Of a stretch of 64,000 nt of DNA, positions 11,919 to 27,980 are shown in pieces (within the stretch, counting starts at the first letter, position 1; each line of letters begins with the position of its first letter). Both the position numbers and the translations under genes were made by a program. Source of the stretch: Amoebophrya sp. A120. Lineage: Eukaryota > Protista > Dinoflagellata. The DNA lies in assembly GCA_905178155.1 (NCBI GenBank), contig CAJINV010000001.1:11763832-11827831 (forward strand), read 5' to 3'. The notes below the pieces were generated by a model. The model did not search any database, was not told the DNA's origin, and saw only the letters and a program-made list of their open reading frames with translations.

Positions 11919-13412
11919 TCAGCTTTTCAGCTTTTCCATTGACGGACCAGCGGCCGACGAAGTTTCCGCTCCGAGCAGGAATCGCACACCGATTCCAAAG
12001 AGCATCACAATCAGGCCCAGAAACTGCCACCACGCGTAGGATTCGCGCAAAACAGCAACTGCGGCGAGAGCCGCGACCGCACGATTCAGGTTTTTGAAAA
12101 TCGCCATGGAGTAGCTCCCCGTCCGCTCAATCAGCAGCACTTCAACCAACAGGGTTACCGACGCCATAACTCCCTCGCCGAAAACGATCACGAAAAGCAA
12201 GGTTGCGTACCTCCCGTGCCCGTTCGGCTCCTTCAAAATTTGCTCGCTGCGCTCTGCCGGACGCCAATATCCACCCAAGAAATAACTGCTGTCACCGGGC
12301 GCACGACCGCTTCGTTCCGCGACTAGGGAGATAACGAGGTACGCTACTGCGCTCAAAGGCGCCTGGATGCGCATGATGTGCAGCACGGACGGGAATTTCT
12401 TCTCCGTGTCAGCTACATTAACCGCATCAAAAGTTGGATCGCCGGCAAGCAAATCGGCGTCATTTCCTCCGGGTGCCGCAGACACAATCTCCCTCCCCTG
12501 GACCAGCGGGCTGTCCTCCCGGTCGGGCTCGAATGGCGTCCCGCCGACTTCTGGCGTCGGTCCGCCGAACGAAGAATTGGAAGATACTCGCTCTAACGTG
12601 CTCTCGTAGGTTCCGGATACGCAATCGATCACGATGATGCGCATGGCCGTGACCACTGAAGCGGCAAACGCCCAACAGAGACCCAGGCCGTAGTTTTTGT
12701 GGTGAATGAAACCCGCGTCGTGGAAAAACTCTTTCGGAAGGGAAGACAGCGTGCCGCCGACAACAATCGGCAAGACGGACAAATACGCGTAGAAATTGTA
12801 CTGGATGCTGGGTTGAAAGGCGATGGTCAGCGCGATTGACAGAGCCGGCGTCATCATCATAACTGCTTCCAATATCGAAGCCGGGAGGTACAGGAGCCCG
12901 TACATCTCGGTGAGCGTATTCAGGACGTTGAAAAAGGTGAACAGCGCCAGCATCCCAAGCGGCACGCCGCAGAGGGATATTTGGGATTTTGATCTGAACT
13001 GTTCGACAAGGCTCTGGAGCTCGTTGCTCCCGGTCGGATTGGTGCTCAGATTCCGCTGCTGGCTCTCCGGTACAACCACGCGCTTCTTCAGCAAATACAG
13101 CGACACTACGATGAACCACGTGGTCGTGATAAACATGGAATGGAAAAGTGGCACGTCAAAGTGAAAGCGCAGGGATCGCAGCCAATACGTCCCGCTCTTC
13201 TCGTCGCGATGGGGGTCACTCACGACAAGCTTGAAGAAGAGCACGAAAAGAATGTAGGCGAAGGCCTGCAAAATCACGAGCAGAGCGCTGTAGCGGTGGA
13301 ACCGGTTTTCCATCATACCGCGGACACATTCAAGAGGGGCAGCGGCATGAGGTTGCCCCTGGCCCTTGGCGCTGTCGGCCGATCCCTGGCGGACAAGAAC
13401 GGGAAGCTCCAT
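11919..13412 (-). CDS. SLC35/triose-phosphate-transporter-like DMT membrane protein (paralog A)
   Basis: Intronless ORF with ~10 hydrophobic segments. Motifs FDVPLFHS, LLYLPASILE and LIERTGSYS..IFKNLNR are shared with the two neighbouring paralogs. Confidence 0.75.
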   Translation of the reverse strand: MELPVLVRQGSADSAKGQGQPHAAAPLECVRGMMENRFHRYSALLVILQAFAYILFVLFFKLVVSDPHRDEKSGTYWLRSLRFHFDVPLFHSMFITTTWFIVVSLYLLKKRVVVPESQQRNLSTNPTGSNELQSLVEQFRSKSQISLCGVPLGMLALFTFFNVLNTLTEMYGLLYLPASILEAVMMMTPALSIALTIAFQPSIQYNFYAYLSVLPIVVGGTLSSLPKEFFHDAGFIHHKNYGLGLCWAFAASVVTAMRIIVIDCVSGTYESTLERVSSNSSFGGPTPEVGGTPFEPDREDSPLVQGREIVSAAPGGNDADLLAGDPTFDAVNVADTEKKFPSVLHIMRIQAPLSAVAYLVISLVAERSGRAPGDSSYFLGGYWRPAERSEQILKEPNGHGRYATLLFVIVFGEGVMASVTLLVEVLLIERTGSYSMAIFKNLNRAVAALAAVAVLRESYAWWQFLGLIVMLFGIGVRFLLGAETSSAAGPSMEKLKS

Positions 13413-13841
13413 TTTGAAGTGATTTTTCGACAAAATGATATCAAATTGAAAATCACGGTCACTACCTGTTTTCTACTTTTGGTGATGCAGAAGTGATCTT
13501 CGCAGTGACGCTCTTTTAACCTTTTTCCAAGAAGCACTTCGCGAATGTATGATTAGTGACTCAGGCCCCGACAAACCGATACTGTGCATGCATACTGAAT
13601 CGCTCGCTGTCATTCCCCGCAGAAGACTACTCGCCAAAAGACCCATCTTCCCCTGTCGACAGAACGATAACTATCCAGAGAACTTCGGGCGGCAACTTCA
13701 AATACGCGACGTCAACCTCAACGCTCAACCGCACCTCAATCAGAACAAAAAAAAAGCATGGATTTGGATGCTTCTGATTTATTGCTGCGCAACGTTCTTC
13801 TGATGAAACTAAACAGATGATGATGCCTGTTGCACAAACTT

Positions 13842-14825
13842 TCACGTCGGAAGCACGCTCGTTCTTTCGCGCGATCGTTGCCGATGCGGAGGCATTGGAT
13901 TTCCCGACCGCTCTCTCGTAAGTTCACGCAGCAACATGGCTCCACCTCCCGACCGCTCCCGTGAGAGTTGACGCGAGGACAGCTCAGACAGTGTGGTATT
14001 GGCCGTAACTTGCCGCAGGAGCTCCGACGTGACTTGGCGCTGCAGACTGCGAATTTCGCCCCCGACTGGCACTCCGCCCAAATCCTGGTCGGCCAGCACA
14101 AAATTTTTCGCTGTCACGACCTGGATGGCGTCGTCATCTAGGTCTTCTCGAAGTGTTTCGGGCAGTTTGTCCAGACGCTCCTCTACCGTGCGAATTCTGA
14201 CTGTGCCAAACGAGAACCGTAGATACACGCCGAAGACGATCACTAGGATGCCGATGAACTGCCAGTAGGCAAAGCTCTCACGCAGGACCGCAACCGCAAA
14301 AACAATCGCAAGTATCCGGTTGATGTTTCCGAAGATGGCCACACTGTACGCTCCGCATCGCTCTATCAGACGAAATTCCGCAAACACCCACAAAAAGCCC
14401 ATGATGCCCTCGGCGACGACAAGGAATGCGACGAGTGTCGCGAACCGCTTCTCCCCATCAGGATCCTCGGCCAGAATTTCCTTACTGCGCTTCACTGGTT
14501 TCCAATCGCCGTTCACCAACCCGTGGCTCCGCTCCACAACTAGGCTGAGAACGAGAAAACAAACGCCACTGGCGGGCGCCACAGCTCGGAGGATGCTTAA
14601 CGCATCTGGCACAAGAGCGCCGGCGGTTTGTATTTCCGCGCGACGGATTTCGGGACTTCCCCCTGAATCCAGTGTGCGGCCTTCCTGCAGTAACGGCCCG
14701 CCAACAAAATCGTCAGTACGAAAATTTTCTTCGTCTCGCGGGTGCAACTGGGGCGCCGGCTCGCGCTCGAATCGCGTTGTGGCACGGTCATGTCTCGCAT
14801 GCGCGGGAACAGTCCGGTAGAAGCC
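13842..14825 (-). pseudogene. C-terminal half of an SLC35/DMT paralog (B); N-terminal half absent, abuts the retroelement
   Basis: EGIMGFLWVFAEFRLIERCGAYSVAIFGNINR is nearly identical to paralog C. The open frame starts right after the TAG at 14826-14828, has no ATG before the conserved part, and no N-terminal half is visible beyond the element. Confidence 0.65.
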
Positions 14826-14862
14826 CTAAGGCCCAAGTGAATACCTAGATTTTCCATGAAAC

Positions 14863-15027
14863 CGATGAGACCGAAGGTCGTAAATGTCTCGAAAGACGAT
14901 ACAAAGAGAAACGGCGCTTCGAAAAGCACTACCTAAACGCACAGTGGTATCGATGGGACCGAAAAACGTAATGTCTCGAAAGACGATACAAAAAGAAAAA
15001 GCGCTTCGAGAAGCAATACATAAATGG
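14863..15027. repeat. Two imperfect ~76-bp direct repeats (period 88) in the retroelement 3' UTR
   Basis: CGATG(A/G)GACCGAA..AATGTCTCGAAAGACGATACAAA..GCGCTTCGA(A/G)AAGCA occurs at 14863 and 14951. Confidence 0.85.
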
Positions 15028-15423
15028 CTGGCGTAGATCGGCTTGGCGAGGAATAAGGACTCGATCTTCCTGTTTGTAAATTTCAGCTCGCATATCCGGG
15101 TCTGGTCGTACGCAAGTCAGTTCAGCAAATAAGAGTTCGTAGTACAGCAAAGGAAAGCTGTCTTGTCGTATCGTGTGAACAGCCTTTCGTAAGTCGTCCT
15201 GTCGGGGAATTAGGTCTCGGTGTTCCAGCTCGTTATTCTCCGCTCGAAAATGCGGGTCAGGTCGTATTCAAATCACGTCAGCAAAGAAAAGCTCGTAGTG
15301 CAACATGGCTCCGTTGGTGTAGTGGGCTCTCGTACTCGTTTACAGCTCGGAAAGCCAGGTCTTGCCGTACTCAAAGTTCGGTAGTAACACAAGGAAAAAG
15401 TTCTCGTAAAGTCCTGGTCAGCG

Positions 15424-18400
15424 TCACGCCGGGGCTGGGGCGCCGGCTTGTGGGGCCTCGTCCGTCTCCAGATATCCTTCTCGGGCGAGGAGGCTTTCGA
15501 ACCTAGACGCAGCTCCTTTTTTTCTTTGGTTTATCGCGATTCCTACCGCCTCGGGGGCGTCGTCTTCTTTCTCCGTTAGTAGCTCGGCGTCTTCGAACAA
15601 ATCAAATACGTTCTCGGATGTGTCGTTCGCGGCAGGGTCGATGGAGTCCCATTCTTTCGGATTAATGTAGCAAAAATCGGCGACACTCGAAGAGACCAGT
15701 GGCACAGTCGCCCACTCTTGCTGGTTCCAAATCGGGCTCGTCGAAGAAATACGGAAGCGAGGCCCAGGTCTCTCTGAACCTTGCTTCTTCTTCGCGACGT
15801 CTGCGGCAGCGGCATAAATCTCGTGCGCCGTAGCCGGGTTCTTTTTTACCGCAGCTAGTGGCAGGGAACATATCCACGTCGTTCTACCGGTGAGGAGATC
15901 CCCATGTCGAAGTACTAGTTCCGCCACGTTTTTCGCGTAAGCTGCGTTGGCGGCAACTGAAGGCTTCATGAGATTGGCGTCCGGCAGCATTATGTTTGCT
16001 GCGAAGCGCCTCCCTGAACTCGTCTTCAGGTAGGCAGTGTTGTTCCTGCCCCGGTAGAACACGTCGTCACCCCGGGTGTCGGTCGCGGGCTCGTCGGAAT
16101 CGGGCTCGTTCTCGAGCTGGATCGTCACTCCTTCTTTCCGCATGGTCGAATTAGCGCGAAGTAGATCATAGCTGATTCTGTGGGGGAGCGCAAACTTCAT
16201 CTTGTCGCTCGTCAGAAGTCTTAACCTATCCTCTTTCTCGGTGCCCGATAAGCCCCAGCACGCCGCCTGTAGGAGGAAGTCGTAGCGCGTCTCGTTCAGC
16301 GCGATCAGCTCGCTCGTGGCCGCCCTCCGGATCGTCCTGTCGTATCTTTCTTTCCAATTTTTTATTCCCATCAACCCTGCGAAGAAGATGTCCCCGGCAG
16401 AAATCGGCTCCCCTTCGGCCTCTGCGAAACCCCGAACGAACCGGCTCAGGTTTTTTGATGTGACTCCGTAGAATTGCATCAAGCGCACTGCTACTTCGTT
16501 CGTTATCTCGTTGAACAGAGGTTCGTCGTAGTATTTCAGCACCACGAGGAGGTGGCGCACTCTGCTCGTTGTAGCCCACCCTGGGATTTGACTGAATTCT
16601 TCCAGCGTCGGTTTGTTGCCCAGTAGCCGGAAGGCCTCTCGGGTGATAGCTAAAGCGAAGCAGAGGTGCTGGCGGCAGGCGGAGCGGTAGCTAATTCCTA
16701 CTTGGCAAGCGATTGGGAAACCGAAAAGTTTGGCGCTTTTAACAATCCTTATCGCTTTCCCGAAAATTCGAAGGCATTGCTGGATCGCGGTGGCCAGTTC
16801 GTTGCACTCGGTCGCGGCATCCTGGGAGTCGTCATGGCTTATCACGATTGCTTCGCATTTTCTGACCGCCAAGAAAGTTTTTGTCACCTCTGCCATTATC
16901 TCGAAATGTTCTGCAATCATCGCTGTAACTGTCGGCAGTCTGGGTCCCACGTCGGTTTTTCGGAAAGCGATTTCCAGATCGGTGTCATCGACGCACCCCA
17001 TAGCTGTTTTTCGGTCCTTTGCATGTGGGAATTTATCGCACATACTCTGGATGAAATCCGACAGGAAGCTCGGTTTCTCGTCGACCGCAACGGCCTCGCG
17101 CTGGTAAACTTGACTGATATCTCTTTGCGCGTAGCACATCGCGGCACGGAAATCGCTTCGGATGATTTCCTGGGCGACGCGGATCATCGCTTTCGCTACA
17201 CCGATACCTTTATCGTCAAGCTTTCCGTGTTCGTCGTAGCAGAGATTGATCGCGGCTTGGGCTGCTGCCAACCAGGGAGCTAACAGTAGCGCCCCCGTAC
17301 ACCAGGCGCTGTGCGTCCCCTGCACTCCCAACCTGTAATCTGAGACGCGTAAAGTCACCTGGTCAGAAGTCAGGTAAATTTTTTTATTACTGAATCGGAG
17401 CAGGTTGTGTATGAGGAACACGGGGCGCGCGCCGACTGATTTGAACACCACGCGCGAGGTCAATCTTGTTAAGCAATTGAACATTTGCTTCAGGTCCAGG
17501 GAAATCACGAGAGTGAAATCGTCGCGGCTGATCGAGGACTTCAATTTTCTTCGTCGAAATTCGGTGGACAAAAGGCTAATCCCCGGCATCCCTCCGAAGG
17601 TCACCCCGTAGTGTCTCGCTTTTTCGTAAACCAGGGCCATAAAGTGCTGACGCAGGATCTTCTCTTTCATCCTCTCGGAGAAGAGCTGCTTGAACGTTAT
17701 CCGCAACTTCTCCGCGTCCAGTTTTTGACTGTCTTTCGCCAAAAAAGTCCCTATCATTCTTGCGGCTACCTGGTCGAGCACATCGTGCAACTTTCCGGCG
17801 TCCGTTTCATCTCTTATCGCCTTCAGCTCGCCGCTGATGATATCCACAAGCGTCTGCAGCGTCCAACCTGGCAGGCACGAAAATACCTTACCGCGGATCC
17901 CTGTCGGCCCTTGAAGCTCCTCGCTCATTTCGGCGATCGCGTCGGCGGCTTCCGTGGTGGTGATTTCCAACGGGTGGCAGAATTTTGCGTGCTGTAGCAG
18001 TAAATCCAGCAAATTCCGATACTCTGTTCCCGAATAGTCGTACTTTGCCCCGGTGAATTCGATCATGGTCATCGGCTTCGCGAAGTGTATTCGTGCCGTG
18101 TTGATCAGCGCCGTGGGGGGGGAGTCGCAAACCGTCCCGTCGCATACGATCCCTTTTACGGACTTAATCGGCTCGCCTCTCGCTCTCCCCAAATAGACCT
18201 GCTTCGCGGTTGCCATCGTCTTTTTCTTCGATTCGGCGCGCCCGTCTTCGTCCGGGTTCGCGTTTAATGAGCTCACAGGCTTGTCTAAGTGAAGTCTGCT
18301 AGAAAATTCTCTTTTTTTTACTAGCGACGCTTTTAGCAGGGTTTCTGCGATTTTATCTTCGAACTCGGAAAGGCTGCGGAAGTGATGGAAGTCCGTCCGG

Positions 18401-19902
18401 GCGTCGTTAATCGCGCGTGCGAATTTCGCCTTGTCGATTTTCTGGCCGCGGTCGATACGAATCGCGTGGCTGATCCCTTTGTAAATTTCTCTCTCCGCAA
18501 TAAATTCCAGCGACATCGCCCCACAGAAGCCTCCGCGCGGAATTATACTTCTGGGGATCATCTTGTAATCCTCGAAAGCCCCGTATATCCATCCTTCGTG
18601 CTGGCTCGCGTTGGAGTCAGCAAGCACCTGCAGGGGGACGAAGTCGCACGCGTTGTTGTCGAAAACGCTGGCTGGGTTGGTTCTGCTGCTCTCGGTCAAT
18701 ATCGGGCTCATGGCGATTTTCCCCTCGGGGATGTTGGTCTCGATCGTCCCGCAAATCCCGATGGCGGCGTGGTCTTGCATTATCTCCGGCAACTCAGTCT
18801 CCTCACCATCAGCGGTCCACCTGTACGTAACTAAGTGCCCCAGGTCGTCCAGCAGCTCTCGACCTTTCATGAAAACTACATCGGGAGACGACGCATTTCG
18901 ATAGGTTGGCCCTTCGAATGTAAGTGGGTCGTGGTCGACGGTGATCTGCTCACAGAAGTCGATAAGCAGCTTTTTTATTTTTCCCCGGAAATTCGACGAG
19001 GACGAGAGCCGAATCGAGTCCAGGAAGTCCTCGCGCGACGCGGTTTCGTGCTTCATATTCAGGTCGAAACCCAAGAAACAAATCGCCGCAGAGTCACATT
19101 GTTCTTTGTACACGGTCAGGATTTCTTGCAACTGGGCCGAAGCATGGCGGATGTTATCTTCCGTCACCTCCTGGTCCGCTTTTGCACTCGGCGTCACATA
19201 GCATTCTGCGGAGAGAATTCCGTCGCCCGCCACTAAGCTGAACCAGAGGCAGTAGTCCTCCTTTTCCGGGCATTGCAGGATTAGACTCGGAGTCACGTCG
19301 CCCGCGGTCCTGTAGTGAACTGTCCAACTTCGGGAGAAGGATATCCTCTCGCGGCAGGTGCCGATCGATGACGCCTGCCCGGGTCTCGGTGCCGCCATCT
19401 CGTAAATCGCGGCTAGTCCGGATTCGTGGGATCCCCCGATCTGCGCGCTCGACGCGAATTCGACTTTCCTCAAGCAAATTTCGTGTTTTGTGCGGCCCTC
19501 AGATCTTGTCTCGACGGGGAGGCTCGCGGCCGGGTCCAGCGTTTTGAGCTCGCTCAGCCCCAGACGAAATAAAGCGCTGGCGTTCATTTTTGCAGCCTTC
19601 TTCAGGACTTCGCTTGCTGCTTTTACCAGCCTCTCGCTTTTCTTGTTGATCGACTGGATGTTGTAGTGGATCAAGTATATCAACGTCTTGTCCACGGGGT
19701 CGGATGTTGAAGCGGCGACCCCATTCGGAACGCTATACTTGGCGCTGGCGGAGGTGGATGAGTTGCGTGATTTGAATATGTCCGAAATTTCTTGGAATAA
19801 GTTAAAAAAATTTTTGGCGACGCCAAGGGGCCGCCCTATATTGAGTAGCAGGGCGCGCGCAGGCGTCGCCCCTTCCTCCCGCGCAGCAAAAGAGCAGACC
19901 AC
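15424..19902 (-). CDS. Retrotransposon ORF2: AP-endonuclease + reverse transcriptase (start uncertain, non-AUG)
   Basis: APE motifs YNIQS, LGLSELK, CYVTP, GFDLN, PTY..SPDVVF and QDH. RT motifs QGPTGI, TFGGMPGIS, ISLDLKQMFN, GVQGT, CVDD and KLFGFP. Confidence 0.9.
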   Translation of the reverse strand: MVCSFAAREEGATPARALLLNIGRPLGVAKNFFNLFQEISDIFKSRNSSTSASAKYSVPNGVAASTSDPVDKTLIYLIHYNIQSINKKSERLVKAASEVLKKAAKMNASALFRLGLSELKTLDPAASLPVETRSEGRTKHEICLRKVEFASSAQIGGSHESGLAAIYEMAAPRPGQASSIGTCRERISFSRSWTVHYRTAGDVTPSLILQCPEKEDYCLWFSLVAGDGILSAECYVTPSAKADQEVTEDNIRHASAQLQEILTVYKEQCDSAAICFLGFDLNMKHETASREDFLDSIRLSSSSNFRGKIKKLLIDFCEQITVDHDPLTFEGPTYRNASSPDVVFMKGRELLDDLGHLVTYRWTADGEETELPEIMQDHAAIGICGTIETNIPEGKIAMSPILTESSRTNPASVFDNNACDFVPLQVLADSNASQHEGWIYGAFEDYKMIPRSIIPRGGFCGAMSLEFIAEREIYKGISHAIRIDRGQKIDKAKFARAINDARTDFHHFRSLSEFEDKIAETLLKASLVKKREFSSRLHLDKPVSSLNANPDEDGRAESKKKTMATAKQVYLGRARGEPIKSVKGIVCDGTVCDSPPTALINTARIHFAKPMTMIEFTGAKYDYSGTEYRNLLDLLLQHAKFCHPLEITTTEAADAIAEMSEELQGPTGIRGKVFSCLPGWTLQTLVDIISGELKAIRDETDAGKLHDVLDQVAARMIGTFLAKDSQKLDAEKLRITFKQLFSERMKEKILRQHFMALVYEKARHYGVTFGGMPGISLLSTEFRRRKLKSSISRDDFTLVISLDLKQMFNCLTRLTSRVVFKSVGARPVFLIHNLLRFSNKKIYLTSDQVTLRVSDYRLGVQGTHSAWCTGALLLAPWLAAAQAAINLCYDEHGKLDDKGIGVAKAMIRVAQEIIRSDFRAAMCYAQRDISQVYQREAVAVDEKPSFLSDFIQSMCDKFPHAKDRKTAMGCVDDTDLEIAFRKTDVGPRLPTVTAMIAEHFEIMAEVTKTFLAVRKCEAIVISHDDSQDAATECNELATAIQQCLRIFGKAIRIVKSAKLFGFPIACQVGISYRSACRQHLCFALAITREAFRLLGNKPTLEEFSQIPGWATTSRVRHLLVVLKYYDEPLFNEITNEVAVRLMQFYGVTSKNLSRFVRGFAEAEGEPISAGDIFFAGLMGIKNWKERYDRTIRRAATSELIALNETRYDFLLQAACWGLSGTEKEDRLRLLTSDKMKFALPHRISYDLLRANSTMRKEGVTIQLENEPDSDEPATDTRGDDVFYRGRNNTAYLKTSSGRRFAANIMLPDANLMKPSVAANAAYAKNVAELVLRHGDLLTGRTTWICSLPLAAVKKNPATAHEIYAAAADVAKKKQGSERPGPRFRISSTSPIWNQQEWATVPLVSSSVADFCYINPKEWDSIDPAANDTSENVFDLFEDAELLTEKEDDAPEAVGIAINQRKKGAASRFESLLAREGYLETDEAPQAGAPAPA

Positions 19903-20230
19903 CGGGGCCCCCAGAGTGTGAGCGCTTCAAGGCTTGGGGGCTTTGCGCTTTTGGAAAACAGAGACAAGCCGCGGCCGCACTCTTTCGCCGCCGATTCTGC
20001 GCGCTAAGGCCTCTGCATTTACAGGGCCGCGCAGATGCCCCAAGGCGAAGCCAATGGCGGTCGGCTGGCTTAGCCTCCGGCCGCTACCCTGCTTCGCCAC
20101 CATCGCGGAGGGGCGGCGGTCTGCAATCGATGCACCACCGCCCGTCCGGCAAAGGAGAGGGGGCCCGCGCGCACCTTCGGAGCACTCTGGCGGAGGTCCG
20201 CGGATTATCTCCGAGGGACACGTCGCCCAG

Positions 20231-20623
20231 GTCTTGAAATATGTCCGCGACACAAACGCCTCGCGTCTTGGAACATGTCCGCAACACAAAAGCAACACGT
20301 CCGCAACACGTCCGAAATATGTCTGAATTTTGTCTGCAATAAAAAAAAACACGTCCGGAACTTGTGTTTTGAACAACGACGAAAGTTGTGTTTTTTTGGA
20401 TGCAAAAAACACGTCCGGGACGTGTGTTCCTGAACACAGCCAAAATCGATGCCGTAGCATCGTGATTGTTTGTGTTTTTTTTGATGCAAAAAACACAACT
20501 TTTGTCTGTGTTCAGAACACACGTCCCGGACGTGTTTTTTTCACCCAAAAAAACACGAGTCCATTTGTGTTTTCTTGTGTTCGTGCGACTTATTGCAGAC
20601 ATATTCCGGACATATTGCAAGAC
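20231..20623. repeat. Nested fold-back palindrome in the ORF1-ORF2 spacer
   Basis: ~41-bp IR (20404-20444 vs 20500-20540), GTCTGCAATAA/TTATTGCAGAC IR, outer GTCTTGAAATATGTCCG/CGGACATATTGCAAGAC IR, and internal hairpins. Confidence 0.9.
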
Positions 20624-21151
20624 AAGACCCGGACTTATTCCATTCATAGTTTTTCCGGCGATGATGGTTGTTTGTCTCGTGTCTTGTGGTTGTGTTTTTG
20701 TGTTGTTTTTGTGTTTCCGCCGGAGCTCGCGAAGGCGTCGCCTGGCACCACGAAAGCCCGGGCGTGGAGGTGGACGCCCCGGCCGGTCAGATCCTACCTC
20801 CCGCTGCCACGCCCGTGTCCCCGAGCGCCAAAAAGACACAAGCCGGGCACTTACCGGGAAGCCTTCCGCCTCTCCGCGCTCTAGTCCCGCCGGCGCCGGA
20901 TCGTTCCCCCGACGCGGGGCAGCTTCGCGGCGCCGGCTTGGCTGCCGCCAAGACCGCGCCTGGCCTGCCTGCAAAAGAGGGAGGTCCCGGCTGGCTTAAG
21001 GCCCGGCCTGGCGGCCGCTCTGCTGCCTCCTCTGGCCGTTGCCTGGCGGCCCCAGAGAGCAGACACGTGCATCGCACCGCGAACCCAGTCCCCGACGAAA
21101 AGCCGGGACTTATTTTTTTTATTTGTTCCCGACATAGTCGGGCCCTATTTC

Positions 21152-24100
21152 TCATCCAGGGCGCCCGCGCCAACTATACGTAGTCGCGATCTGCAACTCT
21201 TCAGGCCCGGCGCGGCTATCAAGGGGGTCGGGGCCGTCCACTTCATCGTCGAACCATTGCGAAAATGGGTCACATCCACCCCGCGCTACTGCTTTCCGGA
21301 TTGCTTCTGGATGCAGAACTAGCTTCTTGAAGAAAATCGCGGCGCAGGTGAACGCTCGGCTCGGCCGGGCACTCGACTTGCTGGCGGTGGAGATTATCCA
21401 GTCTCCTCCTGCGTCGATGTTCACGTGCATTTTTTTGAAATTGGAGCCGCTGTCGATCTTCGGAAAAAGCTTGTCGACTAGCGCGACGGGGCCGCTCGCG
21501 TAGTCTTCCTCCACCGCCCCCCTCTTCCGTAGGAGCGTCTCGGCCCTTTCCAGGAAAACGCCACACGATTTTGCGTCGGAGTTGTATAGCCTCAAGGCGC
21601 AGCACCAGCTCCGGAACTCCCCACCCTGCGGCAGGTACACGAAGAACTGCTGCACGCGCGAATAGAACAATCTAAAAGCTCCTAAATTCTCGCCCTCGAG
21701 ATCCGGCGGAAAAGCTTTCGTGCTCCGCTCGCTCAGATCGGCTCGCACTTCCTGCAGGTCCGCCGAACCGTCCAGGATTAGGAATGAAGTCATGGGGAGG
21801 CTCTCGGAGGGGCACGAGGACAGAAACCGCACCGCCAGGCTCCGCATCGTAGCAGCGTCGGCCGCTTCGGAGCTGATCGGCAAGAGCGAATTTTTGCCGT
21901 CAAAGGATACCAACGTCCCTTTACGCCCCTGATACCGACTCCGGATTTCCGGATGGTCTTTGAAGGAGGCGGCAGCACTCGGCTCGAAAGAGAGCAGGGC
22001 GGCGCCAGTTTCGAACGGAAATGGCGTCTCCTGTTCTTTCCTTACTCTATCGTCGCTTGTCCGGCCTAAGTCAAGTCTTGGCGCGGTGCGAACTTGGGGA
22101 TCCTCGGCAACCGCTAGTGGGGGAGCTATCGGGGGGATGGCGGTCTTCCTTCTTTTTTTTCCCGGAGAAGTTTGAGGCGGGGGGCTGGGGTTCTTTATCC
22201 CGTTCGTAGACGTGGTCGGGATGCTCCTGCTAGAGGAAGAGGTCGTCGGGGCGGAGCCATCTCCATTCCCGGCCATGAGTCGCGTCCCGTCGCTAATTTG
22301 CTTAGTCACCGGGAGATCGGGGTCGGTGCCTGTCTTTTCCCGCTTTTTTAGCACGCTATCGATCGCCGTGGCGCGGGACTTCTTCAGCTTTCGGATGTCC
22401 CCGGTGAAGTCGATCTGCGTTTTGATTTCTTGCAGCACGGACTCGCGGCTCCCCGACATCTTCTTCTCGAGTTCAATACACAGACTTCGAAGAGCCGCCC
22501 AGTCTTCTGGGTTCTTTTTTGAAATCCAGAACTTCCGTTCCCACTCCGCGTCACTCCCTTTCAACAACCAGCGGACCACTCTCTTGCTATTTTCGGCTCT
22601 CGCCTCTTCAACTCCGGGGTCCGCGGCTGGGGCCGCGGGCTCGTCGGGGAAACCTTTGAGCAGTACGGCCGGGCCTTTCTTGATTGCTGCGCTGGGTTTG
22701 TCGTTGCTTTGCCCCGCGGTTTTCGATTTTTTCGAATCCTTGTCGTTTTCGTCGAGCCTGTGTCTCTTTGCGGCCGCTACCTTCGTATGATTATCCCTAA
22801 ATTTGGCGAGTTGCGCGAGGGTCGTGGCCTTGACAATTCCTGTAGCAGGGTCGCGATTCTGCAGTTTGGTTTTTATGCTCGTCGTTCTTCGAATTAAGTC
22901 CTTTAACGTGCTCTCGAGGTCGGCTTCTTTTCTGGGTCGAAGGAGGAGGGCGTCGGAGTTGCTGGAGGGGCTTCTACCGTCGTCGACTATCTTTAACCCT
23001 TCCGTCTTGCAAAACTTCGCGATTGCATCGTCTGCCGCTTTGGTCAATTCTGATTTGTCCGCCAAGAAGAAAACTTCGCACCTACCGTACACCGGGTCGA
23101 GTTTTTGTTTGTCCCACCGGGCGATCTCGGGACGCTCCTTGGGGGCCTCCTTACGGAATCGTTTATCTTGTGCCATGTACTCTTGCTCGAGGTCGTCCAG
23201 CGCTTTCCTCAGCCTCTCGACTTTCTCTAAATCGTCCTTGTTTGCGGCGGCGTGGCGGCTAAAACTATTTTTGCACCCGTTTACGTACTTTCTCCACTTG
23301 ATTAGCTTCGCGGTCCTCCGCTTCTCGTCGAGCGCGGTGTAGGAAGGGTAGGCCGTAATAATGTTCGGCTTCACATTCAACGCAGCAGCTAGCTTCTTCT
23401 TCCAGACTGCTGCGAAGGAGGCTCTCCCTTCAGGTCCTTTGAATGGACATTCCAAATTCAAAACTAAATTCTTGGCGCCGCGTAGTAATGACGCGGCGTT
23501 CGGCACGTGGTTGGCGATTATCGGCCAAGAATCGACTCCGAAGGAGGTGATGAACTTGGTTATTATTTTCTTCGCGGTTTTTATCTTTTTCTTTTTGCTA
23601 CTGTTTTCCGGCTTCGCGGTGGTATTCAGATCCGGGTCGTCGGGAGTGTCTCCCATAATGGGGGGGTCGTCGGCGGGGGCGCGGCGGCCCGTCGCCGTCA
23701 ATTCTGGACGGCTTATGCTAAACTCGCCTTTGCATTTGTTTTCGCTATCCAGGCTGAGTGAGTGAGCTCGTGGCTCCTCCAAGTCGCCTCCGTCGGGGAT
23801 TTTTTCGGACCAACTGGCGCTCTGGAAAGCCCGTTTTTGGCTCACCACCTTTGGCATCGCGTCGACCACCAAACTCCTGACGTCATCACGACCCAGGATC
23901 TTCAACTGCTCGCAGAGGAGGTTGTTCGCAGGGGCTAGTCTCGCGGTGCCTGGCAAAATTTCGTCAACATGGATCGAGAACTTACTAGTTATCGACCATA
24001 TTTCGACTTGCGCGGCGCAGATAGGGTTGTAGGTCGTTTCGCAGGTAACGGGGGTTGTGTTACAGGGCATCCATATGACCTCATTGACGTGCTGTAGTCG

Positions 24101-27100
24101 AAGCCTGCTTGGTTGCTTCATTTTATCTACTGGCTCGTCGTCGCTGTCGCGGGCGGCCGGCTCCCTCCCGCGCTCTTTTCGCTTCTCCTGCAGAGTGCGG
24201 TCTTTGCTACTACTAGCTGTCAGCTCGTCAACCAACTTTTTCCTGTAATCCCTTACCTCCATCAGTAGTCCTCTTAGCTTTGCGTCCTTTTTCGGCATAA
24301 TATGTATTCTCCACTTGATGACTAAGTACGCGAACGGGGCGTCGTGGTCTTGGAGATTAGTACTGAAAGAATCCAGGTCGAACTCGTCTCCAATCGTGCT
24401 GGCAATATCGTCGAACAAAGGCACCGCATGGGGGGCCGGCGGCGAGGCGTTTTTCTTGGATCCCACTGTGCTGAGCAGGTCGTCGAAGAGCGGCACCTGA
24501 ATCAACGCGCTACCGCTGCTCGGAAGTGCTGTTGTCGACTCCGCGGTCGGCGGCAGGGCGGATGAGGTAGCGGGGTCGTCGAGCGAAGGCGCACCGACCG
24601 GCTTCCTATACGTCATGCCTTTTTTTGAGATTGACATGCTGCTTACCGGGAGTCCAGCGAGAGCTTCGGCTGTCAAATTCGCGACGGACGACTCTTGAAT
24701 GTGCTTTTCACCGTCAGCGGTGGGATGTGCGCTGCGACTTGTCTTGTCTGTTGGAAAATGTTTACCGGAACCCCCGCGGAGAATCACACCCGTTTTTTGC
24801 GAGTCGTCTTGCATGGAGGGCCTCGATGTAATCCTAGCAGAAGTCGGCTTGCAGCTATGCGCTTTGAAAGCGCTTTTCGACGGAAACACCTTGTTACAGA
24901 TCCCGCAACAGTACTCGACCGCCCGGCGTTCCTCGTCGATTATGAGCTTCGCGGTGGCGGGCACTGGAGACATAGATATCTTTGGCGTGGCCGCTGTCGG
25001 TCTCGGCAAAATTGGATCTGGCGCTACTATGTTCTCCGACTCCGACGAATAATCCACAAATCTGCAACTTCCTTTGTTTGAACTGGGCCGCTTTTGAGCG
25101 ACGAAGGGCGATATCGGATCGGAAAAAGAGTCCTTGCTCCATTTGGAACTGATGGCTTGACCGCGCTCCAACGACTCGCCAATCTTTCTTCGCTTCGTTG
25201 ATCGCTCGCTTCGATTGCCAGGCACTTTTGAAATATCGTCGCCGGTCCTGTCGATCAAAATCTCGTCGCGAGAAGGGGGGGCTTTGACTAGATCCGGGAT
25301 CTGGTCTTTTCCAGTAGAGCTTTTCGACGAAGAAGAGGATGGCGAGTCTTCAGACGAAGATGATGGAGGGGGAGGCGGGCGGTCTTTCGCATCGTTCAGC
25401 GAACCCGGATTGCTTTTGTCCCCGACATCCGCTTTCTTCTTATCTTTTTGGCCTCTTTGTTCTTTCTTCTTTTTGTGGTTCGGATCTTCCAGCATGTGGG
25501 CCTTCAGCGAAATGACTTTGTTGAAAAGTCTATCGCAGATGCTACAAACCCAGGCCCACTCGTCATCGTCGAAAAATGACGGGTCGGCGGCGGGGTTTTC
25601 TCGTAACCACCGGAGGGCTTTCGTGTTCTCCTGGTGATTCTCACCTCTTTCGACGTGGAGTTCGAACTCCCTGCGTGAGTCGAACTTCGTGTAGCAGTAG
25701 ATGCACACCAGCGGGCTGTTGATATCTTCGCCCAGGACACGCAGACAGGATTTCTGCGAAAATTCCTCACTCTCGCCTTCCGGGACTAGTTGGCAGAAGG
25801 GTGCTTCGCAACTTCCTGATGGGTCTCGCTTTTTCTTTTCTGTACTATCGCGTCTGGAGGAAGAGGCGGCCGGCGGGTTCGAGCCGGCTTTGCCGCTGGG
25901 CTTTTGTCGTGGTGATGGGTCGGTAGCGGCTACCGCTCTGCCTCCTACTTCGGGCCGTCCTCCGTCACTTGACAACACCGCGGGCAAGGTCCACGACTCG
26001 GTGTCGTGCAGTTTGTCCCAGGACGCCGCGAACGAAAACTGCGGCACATTCGATCGGGCGATTCTCTCTGTCGTCCAAAAACGAAAAGCTTCTTCCAGGG
26101 AGAAACCTGCCGCACACTTCTCTTGAAAGTCAACGGTCCGCGTGGACCTCCACCAGATCACGTGGCGTATGTCCTGGTCAGAGAAATGGAGTATCACTCT
26201 TTTACTCCCTTGGGAAGCCTGCGCAAAGCAAGTAATCTCTTGCTTGAAGCTCTTTCCCCGCTCCGCCAACTGAGCCAGGAACAGTCTCAGTTCGTTTTCG
26301 GTTGCCCTCAGCTTCTTCTCTTTATTGCTCTTGTTCCCGAGAATCCGCGATCTTTGTCGACGAGCTGGCCGTTTTTTCGCATTTGTCGCCAAAAGTTCTC
26401 CCTCCTCGACGAGCTCAATATGTTCGCCGAGAAGAACTGCGTCGCCGATGTTTTTTCCCGACGGGTCGCCCCAAATTTCGGTCGACGTCGCCCCGGACTT
26501 CACGATCGCCCCCTTTGGCGTCCATTCTGTGGCAGAGTGGACCCGCAAAAACTTTCGGCGTTTGATGAGGTGATCCTGCATCTGCCAGTCGTACAAACCA
26601 CCGCCGGGCAGCGTGCTGTGTAGAAACTCTCCGGTCGATTTTTCGATCACGAACTGCGCGCAATCCTGGCCGACTCTATGCACAACTGTTCGGACAGCAG
26701 TGAGGGAGTTCTCGTACTTCAGCGCCTCGATCCAGTTTAGGTTCGAAAGAGGTTTCGGGTCGCATTTCGAGCTCCGTTTCGGTCCCCGTGATTTCGGGTC
26801 GCGTTTCGAGCTCCGTTTCGGTCCACGTGAAGTCGGCAGATGGGAATCGACCTGCTGATCGCGCACTTCGTACTGCTCGGAAAATGGGTCGTCGTCGGTG
26901 TACTTCGCAAACCTAGCGAAGATCGATGTGGACAGTCGCGGGGAAACAACGGCGATGGTCTTCGAAATCCTCCCTCGCTTCTTTCGGGGGATCTTTATGA
27001 ACCCATCAGTCGCCGACGATTCGTTGCAGGTCGAGGCTCCGGTCAATTCGCTGATGGGCATCGCGCTGATCCCCCGCCGCCGGTCGATAATCTTCGGCAC

Positions 27101-27493
27101 GTCGCGTAGCGTCCATTTCTCCGGGTTCGAAATTGTCCTGAAACGTGCTCGCAGTGTTGGACAGAGATTGATGTGGGCGTCGAGGTGTTTCGTGGAGTTA
27201 GTTGTTGTCAACTGCGATGCTACCAAGAGCTTCTTGACTCCGAATTTTCGTTGCTTCGGCGGCGGACTGTTCTTCGTGGTCGTTCCCCCCACCAAAATCT
27301 CCACCTTTTTCTTCAGCAACATGGCCGCCTGCAGAATACCGCTACGCCAGGCCGTGACCGCTAATTCGGGGGGCGGCGGCGGAAGAAAAGGCCCGAAACG
27401 GATTTGGTTATCGTGGAAACTGTCGTCGTAGTGCTGTAGTGAGTTGTACTTGGTAGTCGCCGGCAGCACGGGCGGCAGCTGAGGCACGTACAT
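21152..27493 (-). CDS. Retrotransposon ORF1, 2113 aa, with three C2H2-like zinc fingers
   Basis: Intronless ATG-initiated ORF co-oriented upstream of ORF2. Fingers CIYC-x12-H, CSIC-x12-H and CGIC-x12-H; basic and coiled regions. Confidence 0.8.
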   Translation of the reverse strand: MYVPQLPPVLPATTKYNSLQHYDDSFHDNQIRFGPFLPPPPPELAVTAWRSGILQAAMLLKKKVEILVGGTTTKNSPPPKQRKFGVKKLLVASQLTTTNSTKHLDAHINLCPTLRARFRTISNPEKWTLRDVPKIIDRRRGISAMPISELTGASTCNESSATDGFIKIPRKKRGRISKTIAVVSPRLSTSIFARFAKYTDDDPFSEQYEVRDQQVDSHLPTSRGPKRSSKRDPKSRGPKRSSKCDPKPLSNLNWIEALKYENSLTAVRTVVHRVGQDCAQFVIEKSTGEFLHSTLPGGGLYDWQMQDHLIKRRKFLRVHSATEWTPKGAIVKSGATSTEIWGDPSGKNIGDAVLLGEHIELVEEGELLATNAKKRPARRQRSRILGNKSNKEKKLRATENELRLFLAQLAERGKSFKQEITCFAQASQGSKRVILHFSDQDIRHVIWWRSTRTVDFQEKCAAGFSLEEAFRFWTTERIARSNVPQFSFAASWDKLHDTESWTLPAVLSSDGGRPEVGGRAVAATDPSPRQKPSGKAGSNPPAASSSRRDSTEKKKRDPSGSCEAPFCQLVPEGESEEFSQKSCLRVLGEDINSPLVCIYCYTKFDSRREFELHVERGENHQENTKALRWLRENPAADPSFFDDDEWAWVCSICDRLFNKVISLKAHMLEDPNHKKKKEQRGQKDKKKADVGDKSNPGSLNDAKDRPPPPPSSSSEDSPSSSSSKSSTGKDQIPDLVKAPPSRDEILIDRTGDDISKVPGNRSERSTKRRKIGESLERGQAISSKWSKDSFSDPISPFVAQKRPSSNKGSCRFVDYSSESENIVAPDPILPRPTAATPKISMSPVPATAKLIIDEERRAVEYCCGICNKVFPSKSAFKAHSCKPTSARITSRPSMQDDSQKTGVILRGGSGKHFPTDKTSRSAHPTADGEKHIQESSVANLTAEALAGLPVSSMSISKKGMTYRKPVGAPSLDDPATSSALPPTAESTTALPSSGSALIQVPLFDDLLSTVGSKKNASPPAPHAVPLFDDIASTIGDEFDLDSFSTNLQDHDAPFAYLVIKWRIHIMPKKDAKLRGLLMEVRDYRKKLVDELTASSSKDRTLQEKRKERGREPAARDSDDEPVDKMKQPSRLRLQHVNEVIWMPCNTTPVTCETTYNPICAAQVEIWSITSKFSIHVDEILPGTARLAPANNLLCEQLKILGRDDVRSLVVDAMPKVVSQKRAFQSASWSEKIPDGGDLEEPRAHSLSLDSENKCKGEFSISRPELTATGRRAPADDPPIMGDTPDDPDLNTTAKPENSSKKKKIKTAKKIITKFITSFGVDSWPIIANHVPNAASLLRGAKNLVLNLECPFKGPEGRASFAAVWKKKLAAALNVKPNIITAYPSYTALDEKRRTAKLIKWRKYVNGCKNSFSRHAAANKDDLEKVERLRKALDDLEQEYMAQDKRFRKEAPKERPEIARWDKQKLDPVYGRCEVFFLADKSELTKAADDAIAKFCKTEGLKIVDDGRSPSSNSDALLLRPRKEADLESTLKDLIRRTTSIKTKLQNRDPATGIVKATTLAQLAKFRDNHTKVAAAKRHRLDENDKDSKKSKTAGQSNDKPSAAIKKGPAVLLKGFPDEPAAPAADPGVEEARAENSKRVVRWLLKGSDAEWERKFWISKKNPEDWAALRSLCIELEKKMSGSRESVLQEIKTQIDFTGDIRKLKKSRATAIDSVLKKREKTGTDPDLPVTKQISDGTRLMAGNGDGSAPTTSSSSRSIPTTSTNGIKNPSPPPQTSPGKKRRKTAIPPIAPPLAVAEDPQVRTAPRLDLGRTSDDRVRKEQETPFPFETGAALLSFEPSAAASFKDHPEIRSRYQGRKGTLVSFDGKNSLLPISSEAADAATMRSLAVRFLSSCPSESLPMTSFLILDGSADLQEVRADLSERSTKAFPPDLEGENLGAFRLFYSRVQQFFVYLPQGGEFRSWCCALRLYNSDAKSCGVFLERAETLLRKRGAVEEDYASGPVALVDKLFPKIDSGSNFKKMHVNIDAGGDWIISTASKSSARPSRAFTCAAIFFKKLVLHPEAIRKAVARGGCDPFSQWFDDEVDGPDPLDSRAGPEELQIATTYSWRGRPG
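26753..26830. repeat. 2 x 39-bp tandem repeat inside ORF1 (SRGPKRSSKxDPK)
   Basis: Two adjacent 39-bp units differing at 2 positions. Confidence 0.9.
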
Positions 27494-27980
27494 CCCCGGA
27501 GGTTGGTATGGGTGGTTTTTATTCTCCTAAGGTTTCTACCGGGGTAGATTTTGCAGACTTTGTCCTCTTTAGGGGTTAGTTGTAGGTGTTAATTCTTTCC
27601 TGCTTTGTGTATCTTATTAGCGGTGACAAGATCAAAATGTGGTCATGCAATGAGTTTGGAAAATATGAGGATCAAGAAAGGAAGAAAAAGACAGCAGAAA
27701 AGCCGCTTTGCAGGGTTTGAAACTTTTAGTCGCTCGGGGAGCCGATTACGAAACGAAAAATGCGAAGCGATACCCTCGTTTTTACCTTTTCCGATGCGAT
27801 CGTGTGTCTTTGTTTGTTTTTTGGTGCTAAAGACAAATCTGTTTTGGAGGAGAATAAGGAAACCAAACAAACGACCGAATCCGACGCGTTGTCACTAGCG
27901 GCTGCGTCTAGAATCTGTTGCAGCAACTTGGAAGGCTGAGGGCAGCTCGTGGACACGTCCACCGGCACGCGGGCCACCTC

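What the first reader, a model, noticed from the sequence alone, without database searches (positions are those of the whole stretch)
14832..27525. Very large, divergent APE-RT non-LTR retrotransposon, possibly an undescribed clade
Seen: 12.7 kb, both ORFs free of internal stops, ORF1 2113 aa and ORF2 ~1490 aa. The APE catalytic motifs are recognisable. The RT has CVDD (16984-16995) in place of YADD, DLKQMFN in place of DxxKAFD, ~110 aa between the QG and DD motifs, an extra ~75 aa after the APE, and an unrecognised C-terminal ~250 aa with no visible RNase H or CCHC. Known: typical LINE ORF1s are a few hundred aa, and the QG-to-YADD spacing is much shorter. Novelty is an inference until searched.
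Basis: partly seen in the sequence, partly recalled or inferred. Interest (0 to 1): 0.85.

Follow-up and report, generated by a model that had tools for sequence, protein, structure and literature searches.

The report
Giant single-ORF LINE split by intron

Summary

The reading as a divergent APE-RT non-LTR retrotransposon is supported:
- The AP-endonuclease catalytic residues are invariant across 13 relatives, and the modelled domain matches AP endonucleases.
- The RT model matches R2 (Z 23) and human LINE-1 ORF2p (Z 20).
- Five 5'-truncated copies at 95-98% identity share one exact 3' end. Two of them have 14-bp and 21-bp target-site duplications.

Three points need correcting:
- **Ends.** The element spans 14778-27906 (13,129 bp), not 14832-27525.
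- **Architecture.** It is not a two-ORF element. Paralogues carry one ORF of 3136-3894 aa. A contig from a probable RNA run joins 21174 to 19732, removing 1,441 nt in frame. The removed piece has a 6-nt direct repeat and imperfect terminal inverted repeats, like Amoebophrya non-canonical introns.
- **The 103-134-aa gap between RT motifs B and C.** This is shared by all 20 Amoebophrya RTs compared. The nearest other LINE RTs have 28-47 aa.

Of 1.84 billion representative proteins, only 33 match the RT profile at E ≤ 1e-10. Every one of those looked up is from Amoebophrya. Placement among named LINE clades could not be tested here. This is a new variant of a known kind, of moderate to good interest.

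The parts
14778..27906 (-). Full-length non-LTR retrotransposon, 13,129 bp, with no LTR or TIR at its ends and no poly(A) tail
   Evidence: The 3' end ...GACCGTGCCACA is shared exactly by five 5'-truncated copies. Homology with paralogue A (85% nt) starts at 27906. No terminal repeats were found.
27494..27906 (-). 5' UTR, about 413 nt, 86% identical to paralogue A
21174..27493 (-).
   Evidence: ORF. dN/dS against A is 0.38 for aa 1-954, and dN is well below pS in the rest, where dS is saturated. Pfam finds only C2H2 fingers.
24851..25705 (-). Three C2H2-type zinc fingers (aa 597-620, 650-673, 863-881). The cysteine pairs that start them are also present in A and B. C has two such pairs, one in a full C2H2 pattern.
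   Evidence: Pfam zf-C2H2 families; pattern scan
19733..21173 (-). 1,441-nt non-canonical intron (TT..AG, GT..TA, TA..AG or GT..AA depending on register). It has a 6-nt direct repeat GTATAG at both borders and imperfect terminal inverted repeats. It is absent from paralogue A and unique in the genome.
   Evidence: A contig of run X1 joins 19732 to 21174, and depth over the spacer is zero. No other copy was found in the genome. The collinear region in A is 44 aa.
20231..20623 (.). Nested palindromes inside the intron
   Evidence: Inverted repeats I1-I10
15424..19732 (-). Exon 2: the APE, RT and C-terminal region (ORF2 codons 57-1492 plus the stop)
18733..19698 (-). AP-endonuclease (EEP-fold) domain, ORF2 aa 69-390. 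Catalytic residues N81, E118, Y235, D280, N282, D341, D377 and H378 are conserved.
   Evidence: D377 and H378 are invariant and the other six at least 90% conserved in 13 relatives. AF2 model pLDDT is 66. Foldseek top hits are AP endonucleases at E about 2e-7.
16183..18165 (-). Reverse transcriptase with N-terminal extension, fingers, palm and thumb (ORF2 aa 580-1240). Motif A is D803, motif B is Q861-G862, motif C is D972-D973, motif D is KCE 1015-1017 and motif E is LFGF.
   Evidence: Invariant columns. AF2 pLDDT 74, pTM 0.75. Foldseek hits LINE-1 ORF2p at E 4e-10. VIA-align gives Z 23 for R2 and Z 20 for L1.
17005..17241 (-). Clade-specific helical insertion between RT motifs B and C (about ORF2 aa 888-966, two helices)
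   Evidence: Helices 358-380 and 407-418 of the model have block pLDDT 79-96. The spacing is 103-134 aa in 20 Amoebophrya RTs against 28-47 aa in 38 other LINE RTs.
15427..16182 (-). C-terminal roughly 250 aa of unknown fold, with no CCHC and no RNase H, moderately conserved in A, B and C
   Evidence: The modelled part has low pLDDT.
14778..14930 (-). Conserved 3'-terminal UTR element of about 150 nt with small hairpins (GUCU-UUCG-AGAC, GGCC-UUAG-GGCU and a terminal stem). It is a candidate site for RT recognition.
   Evidence: It is 74-76% conserved with A-type and C3-type copies, where the RT coding DNA is 66% identical to A. The alignment fold has 6 pairs with compensatory changes, but only 3 sequences were available.

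Best explanation
The region is a full-length, probably still functional copy of an APE-type non-LTR (LINE) retrotransposon. It belongs to a lineage seen so far only in the syndinian dinoflagellate genus Amoebophrya, and the genome is Amoebophrya sp. A120.

It encodes one polyprotein of about 3,540 aa. In order, this carries: about 2,100 aa of N-terminal sequence with three C2H2-type zinc fingers and otherwise unknown domains; an AP-like endonuclease; a linker; a non-LTR-type reverse transcriptase with a clade-specific two-helix insertion of roughly 80-100 aa between motifs B and C; a thumb and helical region; and an unassigned tail of about 250 aa.

After this copy integrated, a 1,441-nt element with terminal inverted repeats and a 6-nt flanking direct repeat inserted into the linker before the APE domain. 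The host removes it from the RNA as a non-canonical intron and restores the frame. This is why the DNA appears to hold two ORFs.

The inferred mode of spread is target-primed reverse transcription. The endonuclease nicks the target. The RT starts at the element's own structured, non-polyadenylated 3' end. Frequent early termination then yields 5'-truncated copies flanked by target-site duplications of 14 to at least 21 bp.

Shown here: the ORFs, domain folds, conserved catalytic residues, the spliced in-frame junction, truncated copies with a common 3' end, TSDs and purifying selection. Inferred: enzymatic activity, RT recognition of the 3' UTR, DNA binding by the zinc fingers, and the order of events (integration first, intron gain second).
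For: - ORFs are intact.
- Paralogues A, B and C carry one ORF of 3688, 3136 and 3894 aa that covers both parts.
- Run X1 has a contig joining 19732 to 21174 with zero depth across 19810-21168. The junction joins 2 bases of ORF1 codon 2107 to the third base of ORF2 codon 57, so it is in frame. The two exon ends, each aligned separately to A, give a 46-aa linker against 44 aa in A.
- The intron has a GTATAG direct repeat and imperfect TIRs, as described for Amoebophrya non-canonical introns and introners in PMC7789003.
- APE: conserved catalytic residues and an AP-endonuclease fold.
- RT: motifs A-E invariant in 12 relatives. Foldseek hits LINE-1 ORF2p at E 4e-10. VIA-align gives Z 23.4 for R2 and about 20 for L1. 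Weaker hits to the RT profile are canonical APE+RVT_1 LINE proteins.
- Mobility: 5'-truncated copies of 57 bp to 2.5 kb at 95-98% identity end at the same base. TSDs are 21 bp and 14 bp (13 by BLAST). The genes flanking W and A are unrelated. The element has no LTR or TIR.
- Selection: dN/dS is 0.38 in the unsaturated segment, and W against the C38 copy gives 0.31.
- Organism: paralogues on the same 16,501,155-bp contig are named Amoebophrya sp. A120, and the assembly size matches the paper.
Against: - Run X1 is only guessed to be RNA. The joined form could be DNA of an empty site, although its contigs are 100% identical to the window elsewhere and do not cover the spacer. Three RNA runs on record laid no reads at all, so they give no test.
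- No TSD was found for the full-length copy, and its 5' end rests on a single comparison, with A.
- Only one full-length copy of this subfamily is in the assembly.
- No activity was measured.
- Pfam and PDB sequence searches do not see the RT, so that assignment rests on predicted structure, motifs and weak profile matches.
- The function of the N-terminal 2,100 aa is unknown.
Confidence: 0.85

Rival explanations
1. This is a classical two-ORF LINE. ORF1 (2113 aa) and ORF2 (1492 aa) are translated separately from an unspliced bicistronic RNA, with the hairpin-rich spacer acting as an IRES or re-initiation region.
For: Stops in all frames separate the ORFs in the DNA. The public annotation models ORF2 as its own 1387-aa protein.
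Against: A contig removes the spacer exactly and in frame. A, B and C have one continuous ORF. The spacer is absent from A and unique in the genome. ORF2 as listed opens with GTG, and the APE domain begins only about 12 codons after the splice acceptor.
Confidence: 0.07
2. The joined form is not spliced RNA. It is DNA from cells or an allele without the 1,441-nt TIR element, either an empty site or a precise excision. In that case this copy is simply a LINE disrupted by a DNA-transposon insertion.
For: The insert has TIRs and a 6-bp flanking duplication, as a cut-and-paste insertion would. The joined form equals the empty site. The type of run X1 is only a guess.
Against: X1 covers the locus in short, patchy, low-depth contigs with no depth at all on the spacer, as a transcriptome would. 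It has no base differences from the window over about 2.2 kb. Two other runs hold all the sampled words, the spacer included. In this organism about 67% of introns are non-canonical and many have this DR+IR anatomy.
Confidence: 0.1
3. This is a host gene family derived from a retrotransposon (a domesticated RT) rather than a mobile element.
For: Copy number is very low. The long ORFs are intact and under purifying selection. The gene is co-oriented with host genes and contains an intron.
Against: 5'-truncated fragments at 95-98% identity lie at unrelated loci, share an exact 3' end and carry TSDs. All APE catalytic residues are conserved. The flanks of W and A are not homologous.
Confidence: 0.04

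Closest known systems
Human LINE-1 ORF2p (APE-type LINE; PDB 9k6i, 8uw3, 8c8j)
   Same: The order is AP endonuclease, linker, then RT. The RT fold matches over 430-490 residues (Foldseek E 4e-10; VIA-align Z 19-20). The products look like those of TPRT: 5' truncation and variable TSDs.
   Different: There is no poly(A) tail, no C-terminal CCHC and no separate ORF1p. About 2,100 aa are fused N-terminally. A roughly 80-100-aa insertion lies between motifs B and C. Structure-aligned identity is only 11-13%, and Pfam RVT_1 does not detect it.
R2 retrotransposon protein (Bombyx, Taeniopygia; PDB 8gh6, 9dou)
   Same: It gives the best structural Z (22.9-23.4). It is a single-ORF protein with N-terminal C2H2 zinc finger(s) upstream of the RT, and its RT recognises a structured 3' UTR without poly(A).
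   Different: R2 has a C-terminal restriction-like endonuclease and no APE, and it is strictly site-specific (28S rDNA). The insertion flanks here are unrelated to one another.
RTE and ingi/L1Tc-type single-ORF APE LINEs (from general knowledge and PMC3708506)
   Same: A single ORF with APE then RT; no CCHC (RTE); no poly(A) needed (RTE).
   Different: Those proteins are roughly 1,000-1,600 aa. Ingi/L1Tc carry a 2A peptide and RNase H, and neither an NPGP motif nor an RNase H hit is present here. Phylogenetic relation was not tested.
Amoebophrya non-canonical introns and introner elements (Farhat et al. 2021, PMC7789003; Gozashti et al. 2025, PMC12130899)
   Same: For the 1,441-nt spacer: non-GT-AG borders, a direct repeat overlapping both exon/intron boundaries, inverted repeats at the two intron ends, and removal from RNA.
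   Different: The direct repeat is 6 nt (3-5 described). The intron is long (median 247 nt in A120). No second copy was detected in the genome, so it is not shown to belong to a repeated introner family. Its host is a retrotransposon.

Membership tests
APE-type non-LTR (LINE) retrotransposon | Reverse transcriptase of the non-LTR/group II type with catalytic motifs A-E | tested here: met
   D803, QG861-862, DD972-973, KCE and LFGF are invariant in 12 relatives. The AF2 model matches R2 and LINE-1 ORF2p. Pfam RVT_1 itself does not hit.
APE-type non-LTR (LINE) retrotransposon | AP-like (EEP) endonuclease N-terminal to the RT with catalytic N, E, Y, D, N, D, D, H | tested here: met
   D377 and H378 are invariant and the other six at least 90% conserved in 13 sequences. 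The fold matches AP endonucleases at E about 2e-7. One distant family member hits Pfam Exo_endo_phos_2.
APE-type non-LTR (LINE) retrotransposon | 5'-truncated copies sharing one 3' end, flanked by variable target-site duplications, with no LTR or TIR | tested here: met
   Five truncated copies end at the same base. TSDs are 21 bp and 14 bp (13 by BLAST). There are no terminal repeats. No TSD was found for the full-length copy.
APE-type non-LTR (LINE) retrotransposon | Demonstrated reverse transcription or retrotransposition | not testable with these tools
   Needs biochemistry or a mobility assay.
L1 clade | Poly(A) 3' tail, C-terminal CCHC in ORF2p, and a separate ORF1p with coiled coil and RRM | tested here: not met
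   The 3' end is ...GTGCCACA. ORF2 has no C..C motif. Paralogues have a single fused ORF.
R2 / RLE-type LINEs | C-terminal restriction-like endonuclease and site-specific insertion | tested here: not met
   An APE domain is present instead. Insertion flanks are not homologous.
Ingi/L1Tc-type | N-terminal 2A (NPGP) peptide and an RNase H domain | tested here: not met
   No NPGP motif. No RNase H hit in Pfam.
Any named LINE clade (Repbase/Dfam) | The RT nests within the clade in a phylogeny with labelled references | not testable with these tools
   No labelled reference set was available. Against the 34 nearest LINE RTs of a 1.84-billion-protein library, the 20 Amoebophrya RTs lie on one side of a branch of length 1.75 with SH-aLRT 100. 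The alignment was fitted to the Amoebophrya profile and kept 131 columns.
Amoebophrya non-canonical intron / introner element (the spacer) | Removed from RNA; direct repeat across both borders; inverted repeats at the intron ends; non-GT-AG borders | tested here: met
   GTATAG is repeated at both borders, the TIR is TTGGCGCkGGCG...TGGATGAG, and no register gives GT..AG. The RNA nature of run X1 is a guess.
Amoebophrya non-canonical intron / introner element (the spacer) | Member of a repeated family (an introner in the strict sense) | tested here: not met
   A search of the own genome finds only the spacer itself. That tool skips very common words, so this negative is weak.

The most novel reading that the evidence does not exclude
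The element represents a clade-level lineage of LINEs confined to Syndiniales. It is defined by a helical insertion between RT motifs B and C and, in one subgroup, by a 3,100-3,900-aa single polyprotein, which to my knowledge would be the largest LINE protein reported. Its roughly 2,100-aa zinc-finger-bearing N-terminus takes over ORF1-like or targeting roles. In addition, this master copy stays functional only because the host splices out a transposon-derived intron. That makes it a natural intron-marked retrotransposon whose daughter copies can be told from the parent.
Probability: 0.45. Interest if true: 0.68.

Novelty: new variant of a known kind. Interest (0 to 1): 0.6.

Why it matters
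- It extends the known range of LINE architecture. The polyprotein is several times longer than the roughly 900-1,700-aa LINE proteins looked at here, Pfam does not detect its RT, and the RT has an insertion at an unusual place in the palm.
- It shows how divergent mobile elements are in early-branching dinoflagellates, where most repeats are reported as unclassified.
- It corrects a gene model: the public annotation splits one gene in two.
- It gives a clear case of intron gain inside a retrotransposon. Retrocopies pass through spliced RNA, so the intron dates to after integration and marks the parent copy. This is the same logic as engineered intron-containing retrotransposition reporters, here provided by nature.
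- It explains two other first-stage notes on this window (an "IRES-like hairpin array" and "no AUG before the APE") without invoking new translation mechanisms.

Tried and rejected
- **Pfam on ORF2, up to E = 10:** nothing.
- **PDB sequence searches:** the single sequence and two profiles found only a weak EEP hit and no RT.
- **Word-indexed search of 5.8 billion proteins:** only the protein itself.
- **ESM Atlas:** RVT_1 clusters at 0.90-0.92 for the RT part, which is only a lead. Nothing usable for ORF1 aa 230-560.
- **2A peptide and CCHC:** absent.
- **Spacer as a repeated introner or MITE:** no other genomic copy.
- **TSD for the full-length copies W and A:** none convincing.
- **The CCTAAGG "duplication" of another first-stage note:** it lies inside the element, in a 3' UTR hairpin present in all truncated copies. 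It is rejected as a TSD.
- **Site-specific insertion:** flanks are unrelated apart from one chimeric locus.
- **W and A as a segmental duplication:** the flanking genes are not homologous.
- **Rfam and tRNA scans of the window:** nothing.
- **RNA runs X4-X6:** no reads laid, so they give no test.
- **Names of the nearest non-Amoebophrya RTs:** uninformative for clade assignment.
- The exons were handled separately by reference, and only frame arithmetic was done.
Full report
**1. The observation**

The window carries two long minus-strand ORFs, 21152-27493 (2113 aa, ATG) and 15424-19902 (1492 aa), with no internal stops. ORF2 contains no C..C pair at all, so it has no CCHC. Pfam reports nothing for ORF2 even at E = 10, and only C2H2 zinc fingers for ORF1. 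The stated ends and the two-ORF reading are not.

**2. Host and setting**

- The window is C1:11763832-11827831 of a 115.5-Mb assembly.
- Paralogues on the same 16,501,155-bp contig are deposited as Amoebophrya sp. A120 proteins.
- The size and the largest scaffold (16.5 Mb) match the published A120 assembly, in which 98.5% of genes lie in co-oriented blocks and about 67% of introns are neither GT-AG nor GC/GA-AG (PMC7789003).
- All large ORFs of the window are on the minus strand.
- The element sits between paralogous EamA-type transporter genes.

**3. True ends and mobility**

DNA searches of the genome with the 3' region found five shorter copies at 95-98% identity:

| Copy | Length |
|---|---|
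| C38 | 2.5 kb |
| C1:230298 | 528 bp |
| C3:6287438 | 155 bp |
| C3:6287664 | 104 bp |
| C1:12542992 | 57 bp |

All stop at the same base as the window copy...GACCGTGCCACA (window 14778), after which the flanks diverge. There is no poly(A) or simple repeat.

- The 528-bp copy is flanked by a perfect 21-bp duplication, and the 57-bp copy by a 14-bp duplication (13 by BLAST).
- At the 5' side, homology with the only other full-length relative of this subfamily (A, C1:9697522-9708585) begins at window 27906, 413 nt upstream of the ATG.
- The element is therefore 14778-27906, 13,129 bp, with no terminal direct or inverted repeats.
- The genes flanking W and A are unrelated, and insertion flanks in general share nothing. 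These are independent insertions without evident site specificity.

5' truncation, a fixed 3' end and variable TSDs are the signature of target-primed reverse transcription. I found no TSD for the full-length copy itself.

**4. One ORF, not two**

In the three other large relatives the same two parts lie in a single open frame of 3688 aa (A), 3136 aa (B, C2:11046836-11056243) and 3894 aa (C, C1:1142371-1154052). A is collinear with ORF1 and then ORF2, with only about 45 residues where the window has a 1.25-kb stop-filled spacer.

I laid public runs on 18300-22800.
- One run of the same organism (X1, Logan contigs, type guessed as RNA) covers the flanking coding sequence in short low-depth contigs with no base differences.
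- It has zero depth across 19810-21168.
- It contains a contig that joins 19732 directly to 21174, skipping 1,441 nt.
- Two other runs hold every sampled word of the stretch, spacer included.

The junction links the second base of ORF1 codon 2107 to the third base of ORF2 codon 57, so it is in frame. The two exon ends, each aligned separately to A, leave a 46-aa acidic linker against 44 aa in A. The mature product would be about 3,540 aa.

Exons were treated separately by reference.

The skipped piece has the hexamer GTATAG at both borders, so its exact register is ambiguous. No register gives GT..AG; the options are TT..AG, GT..TA, TA..AG and GT..AA. Its two ends are imperfect inverted repeats (TTGGCGCkGGCG...TGGATGAG...ATGTC), and its centre holds the nested palindromes at 20231-20623. 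This is the anatomy described for Amoebophrya non-canonical introns and introner elements: direct repeats over the exon/intron borders and inverted repeats joining the intron ends.

I found no second copy of it in the genome, so strict introner family membership is not shown. Because retrocopies derive from spliced RNA, and A lacks it, the intron was most likely gained after this copy integrated.

This also accounts for two other first-stage notes on this window. ORF2 lacks its own AUG because it is not a separate cistron. The "IRES-like hairpins" are intron sequence.

**5. Endonuclease**

In an alignment of 13 relatives D377 and H378 are invariant, and N81, E118, Y235, D280, N282 and D341 (ORF2 numbering) are at least 90% conserved. 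This is the catalytic set of AP-type endonucleases. An AlphaFold2 model of aa 60-470 (pLDDT 66, pTM 0.70, ordered to about aa 390) has bacterial, archaeal and human AP endonucleases as its best Foldseek matches (E about 2e-7). The roughly 80 residues after the domain are predicted to be disordered.

**6. Reverse transcriptase**

Twelve relatives from this genome share invariant D803 (motif A), Q861-G862 (B), D972-D973 (C), K1015/E1017 (D) and the LFGF glycine (E). The model of aa 540-1300 has pLDDT 74 and pTM 0.75. Its structural matches are:

| Target | Score |
|---|---|
| Human LINE-1 ORF2p | Foldseek E 4e-10; VIA-align Z 19-20, 430-490 aligned residues |
| R2 proteins | VIA-align Z 22.9-23.4 |
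| Group II intron RTs | VIA-align Z 18.7 and below |

It is thus a non-LTR-type RT. Structure alone does not say whether it is nearer L1 or R2.

The long B-to-C spacing is real and is modelled as two helices with block pLDDT 79-96. It measures 103-134 aa in all 20 Amoebophrya RTs compared, against 28-47 aa in 38 other LINE RTs. It is a shared derived character of the lineage, not a peculiarity of this copy.

The last roughly 250 aa have no CCHC, no RNase H hit and no confident model.

**7. Relatives**

A profile of the RT region was scored against 1.84 billion representative proteins. It found 22 proteins at E ≤ 1e-30 and 33 at E ≤ 1e-10. All eight of those looked up are from Amoebophrya: seven carry A120 or AT5 names, and one NCBI entry is unnamed. 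The tail of hits, at E 1e-9 to 1e-3, consists of ordinary LINE proteins with Pfam RVT_1 and Exo_endo_phos_2, for example from Tribolium.

In a maximum-likelihood tree the 20 Amoebophrya RTs lie on one side of a branch of length 1.75 (SH-aLRT 100) from the 34 nearest LINE RTs. The giant-ORF elements (W, A, B, C) fall in one subgroup together with AT5 sequences. There are three caveats:
- The alignment was fitted to the Amoebophrya profile.
- Only 131 columns were kept.
- The comparison set carries no clade labels.

I could not test placement among named LINE clades. Non-LTR retrotransposons have been reported in A120 in general terms. I found no description of this family in two full-text searches.

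**8. The N-terminal 2,100 aa**

- **Identified features.** It has C2H2-type fingers at aa 597-620 and 650-673 and a C2HC-like one at 863-881. The cysteine pairs that start them recur in A and B. C has two such pairs, one in a full C2H2 pattern. A block at aa 239-508 is shared with B and with two fragments. Nothing else was recognised.
- **Selection.** Against A, aa 1-954 give dS 0.33 and dN/dS 0.38. Further on dS is saturated, but dN stays well below pS.
- **Mosaic origin.** Identity to A drops sharply at about aa 930-960, from 60-95% to 20-50%. The 5' UTR plus the first 3.3 kb are 85% identical in DNA, against 66% for the RT region. The 5' third of W and A therefore shares a much more recent ancestor than the rest, which points to recombination or template switching between lineages.
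- **More than one source copy.** W against the truncated C38 copy gives dN/dS 0.31. Those two diverged while still under selection, so more than one active source copy existed.

**9. 3' end**

The last roughly 150 nt are 74-76% conserved with A-type and C3-type copies. They fold into small hairpins, with six pairs showing compensatory changes, but only three sequences were available. I take this as a candidate RT recognition element, as in other LINEs that do not use poly(A). This is inference.

**10. Verdict**

The corrections are the ends, the single-ORF architecture with a spliced non-canonical intron, and the fact that its odd RT features belong to a whole Amoebophrya-restricted lineage. 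It is a LINE by every testable criterion, so the kind is known. The size of the polyprotein, the insertion in the palm, the sequence distance from all profiled RT families, and the intron gained inside a retrotransposon make it a new variant of moderate to good interest.

Noticed in passing
L041 (G000:C3:6285938-6289091), about C3:6287400-6287900: This is a chimeric locus. The last 127 nt of the EamA-type gene that lies just upstream of the window element (window 28099-27973, 97% identity) are joined through 19 unmatched nt to the last 104 nt of the element. Two further partial 3' ends follow, each followed by GACATGATGCTAGGC. It looks like template switching during reverse transcription, or repeated insertion at one site.
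   Followed up: partly
window 24640-27906 versus G000:C1:9705631-9708909: The relation between this copy and paralogue A is mosaic. The 5' UTR plus the first roughly 950 codons are 85% identical in DNA (dS 0.33), while the rest is about 66% identical (dS saturated), with a sharp break near aa 930-960. This suggests recombination between LINE lineages.
   Followed up: partly
window 59248-59501 and 62047-62300: There is a repeat of about 255 bp in two copies in opposite orientation, 74% identical to each other. Each is 91% identical to one of two copies downstream of paralogue C (about C1:1158550-1159730). It may be a MITE or introner family.
   Followed up: no
window 11919-13433, 13842-14747, 27981-30098: Three paralogous EamA-type transporter genes on the minus strand (38-53% identity). 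The retrotransposon lies between the second and the third.
   Followed up: partly
G000:C38:46732-49279 (L030/L031): This 5'-truncated 2.5-kb copy carries a tandem duplication of about 108 bp in the 3' UTR (equivalent to window 15057-15165). Its coding differences from the window copy give dN/dS 0.31, so it descends from a different active source copy.
   Followed up: partly
L009-L023, L053, L054 (e.g. C1:6027759, C2:7976051, C1:8221301): A second subgroup of the same Amoebophrya-specific RT lineage has ORFs of 1,200-2,100 aa, with many intact copies. Only one of eight gets any Pfam hit (Exo_endo_phos_2). These would need the same treatment.
   Followed up: partly
window 15424-19902: The public annotation models only a 1387-aa protein for the ORF2 part, a gene model split by the unrecognised 1,441-nt intron.
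   Followed up: yes
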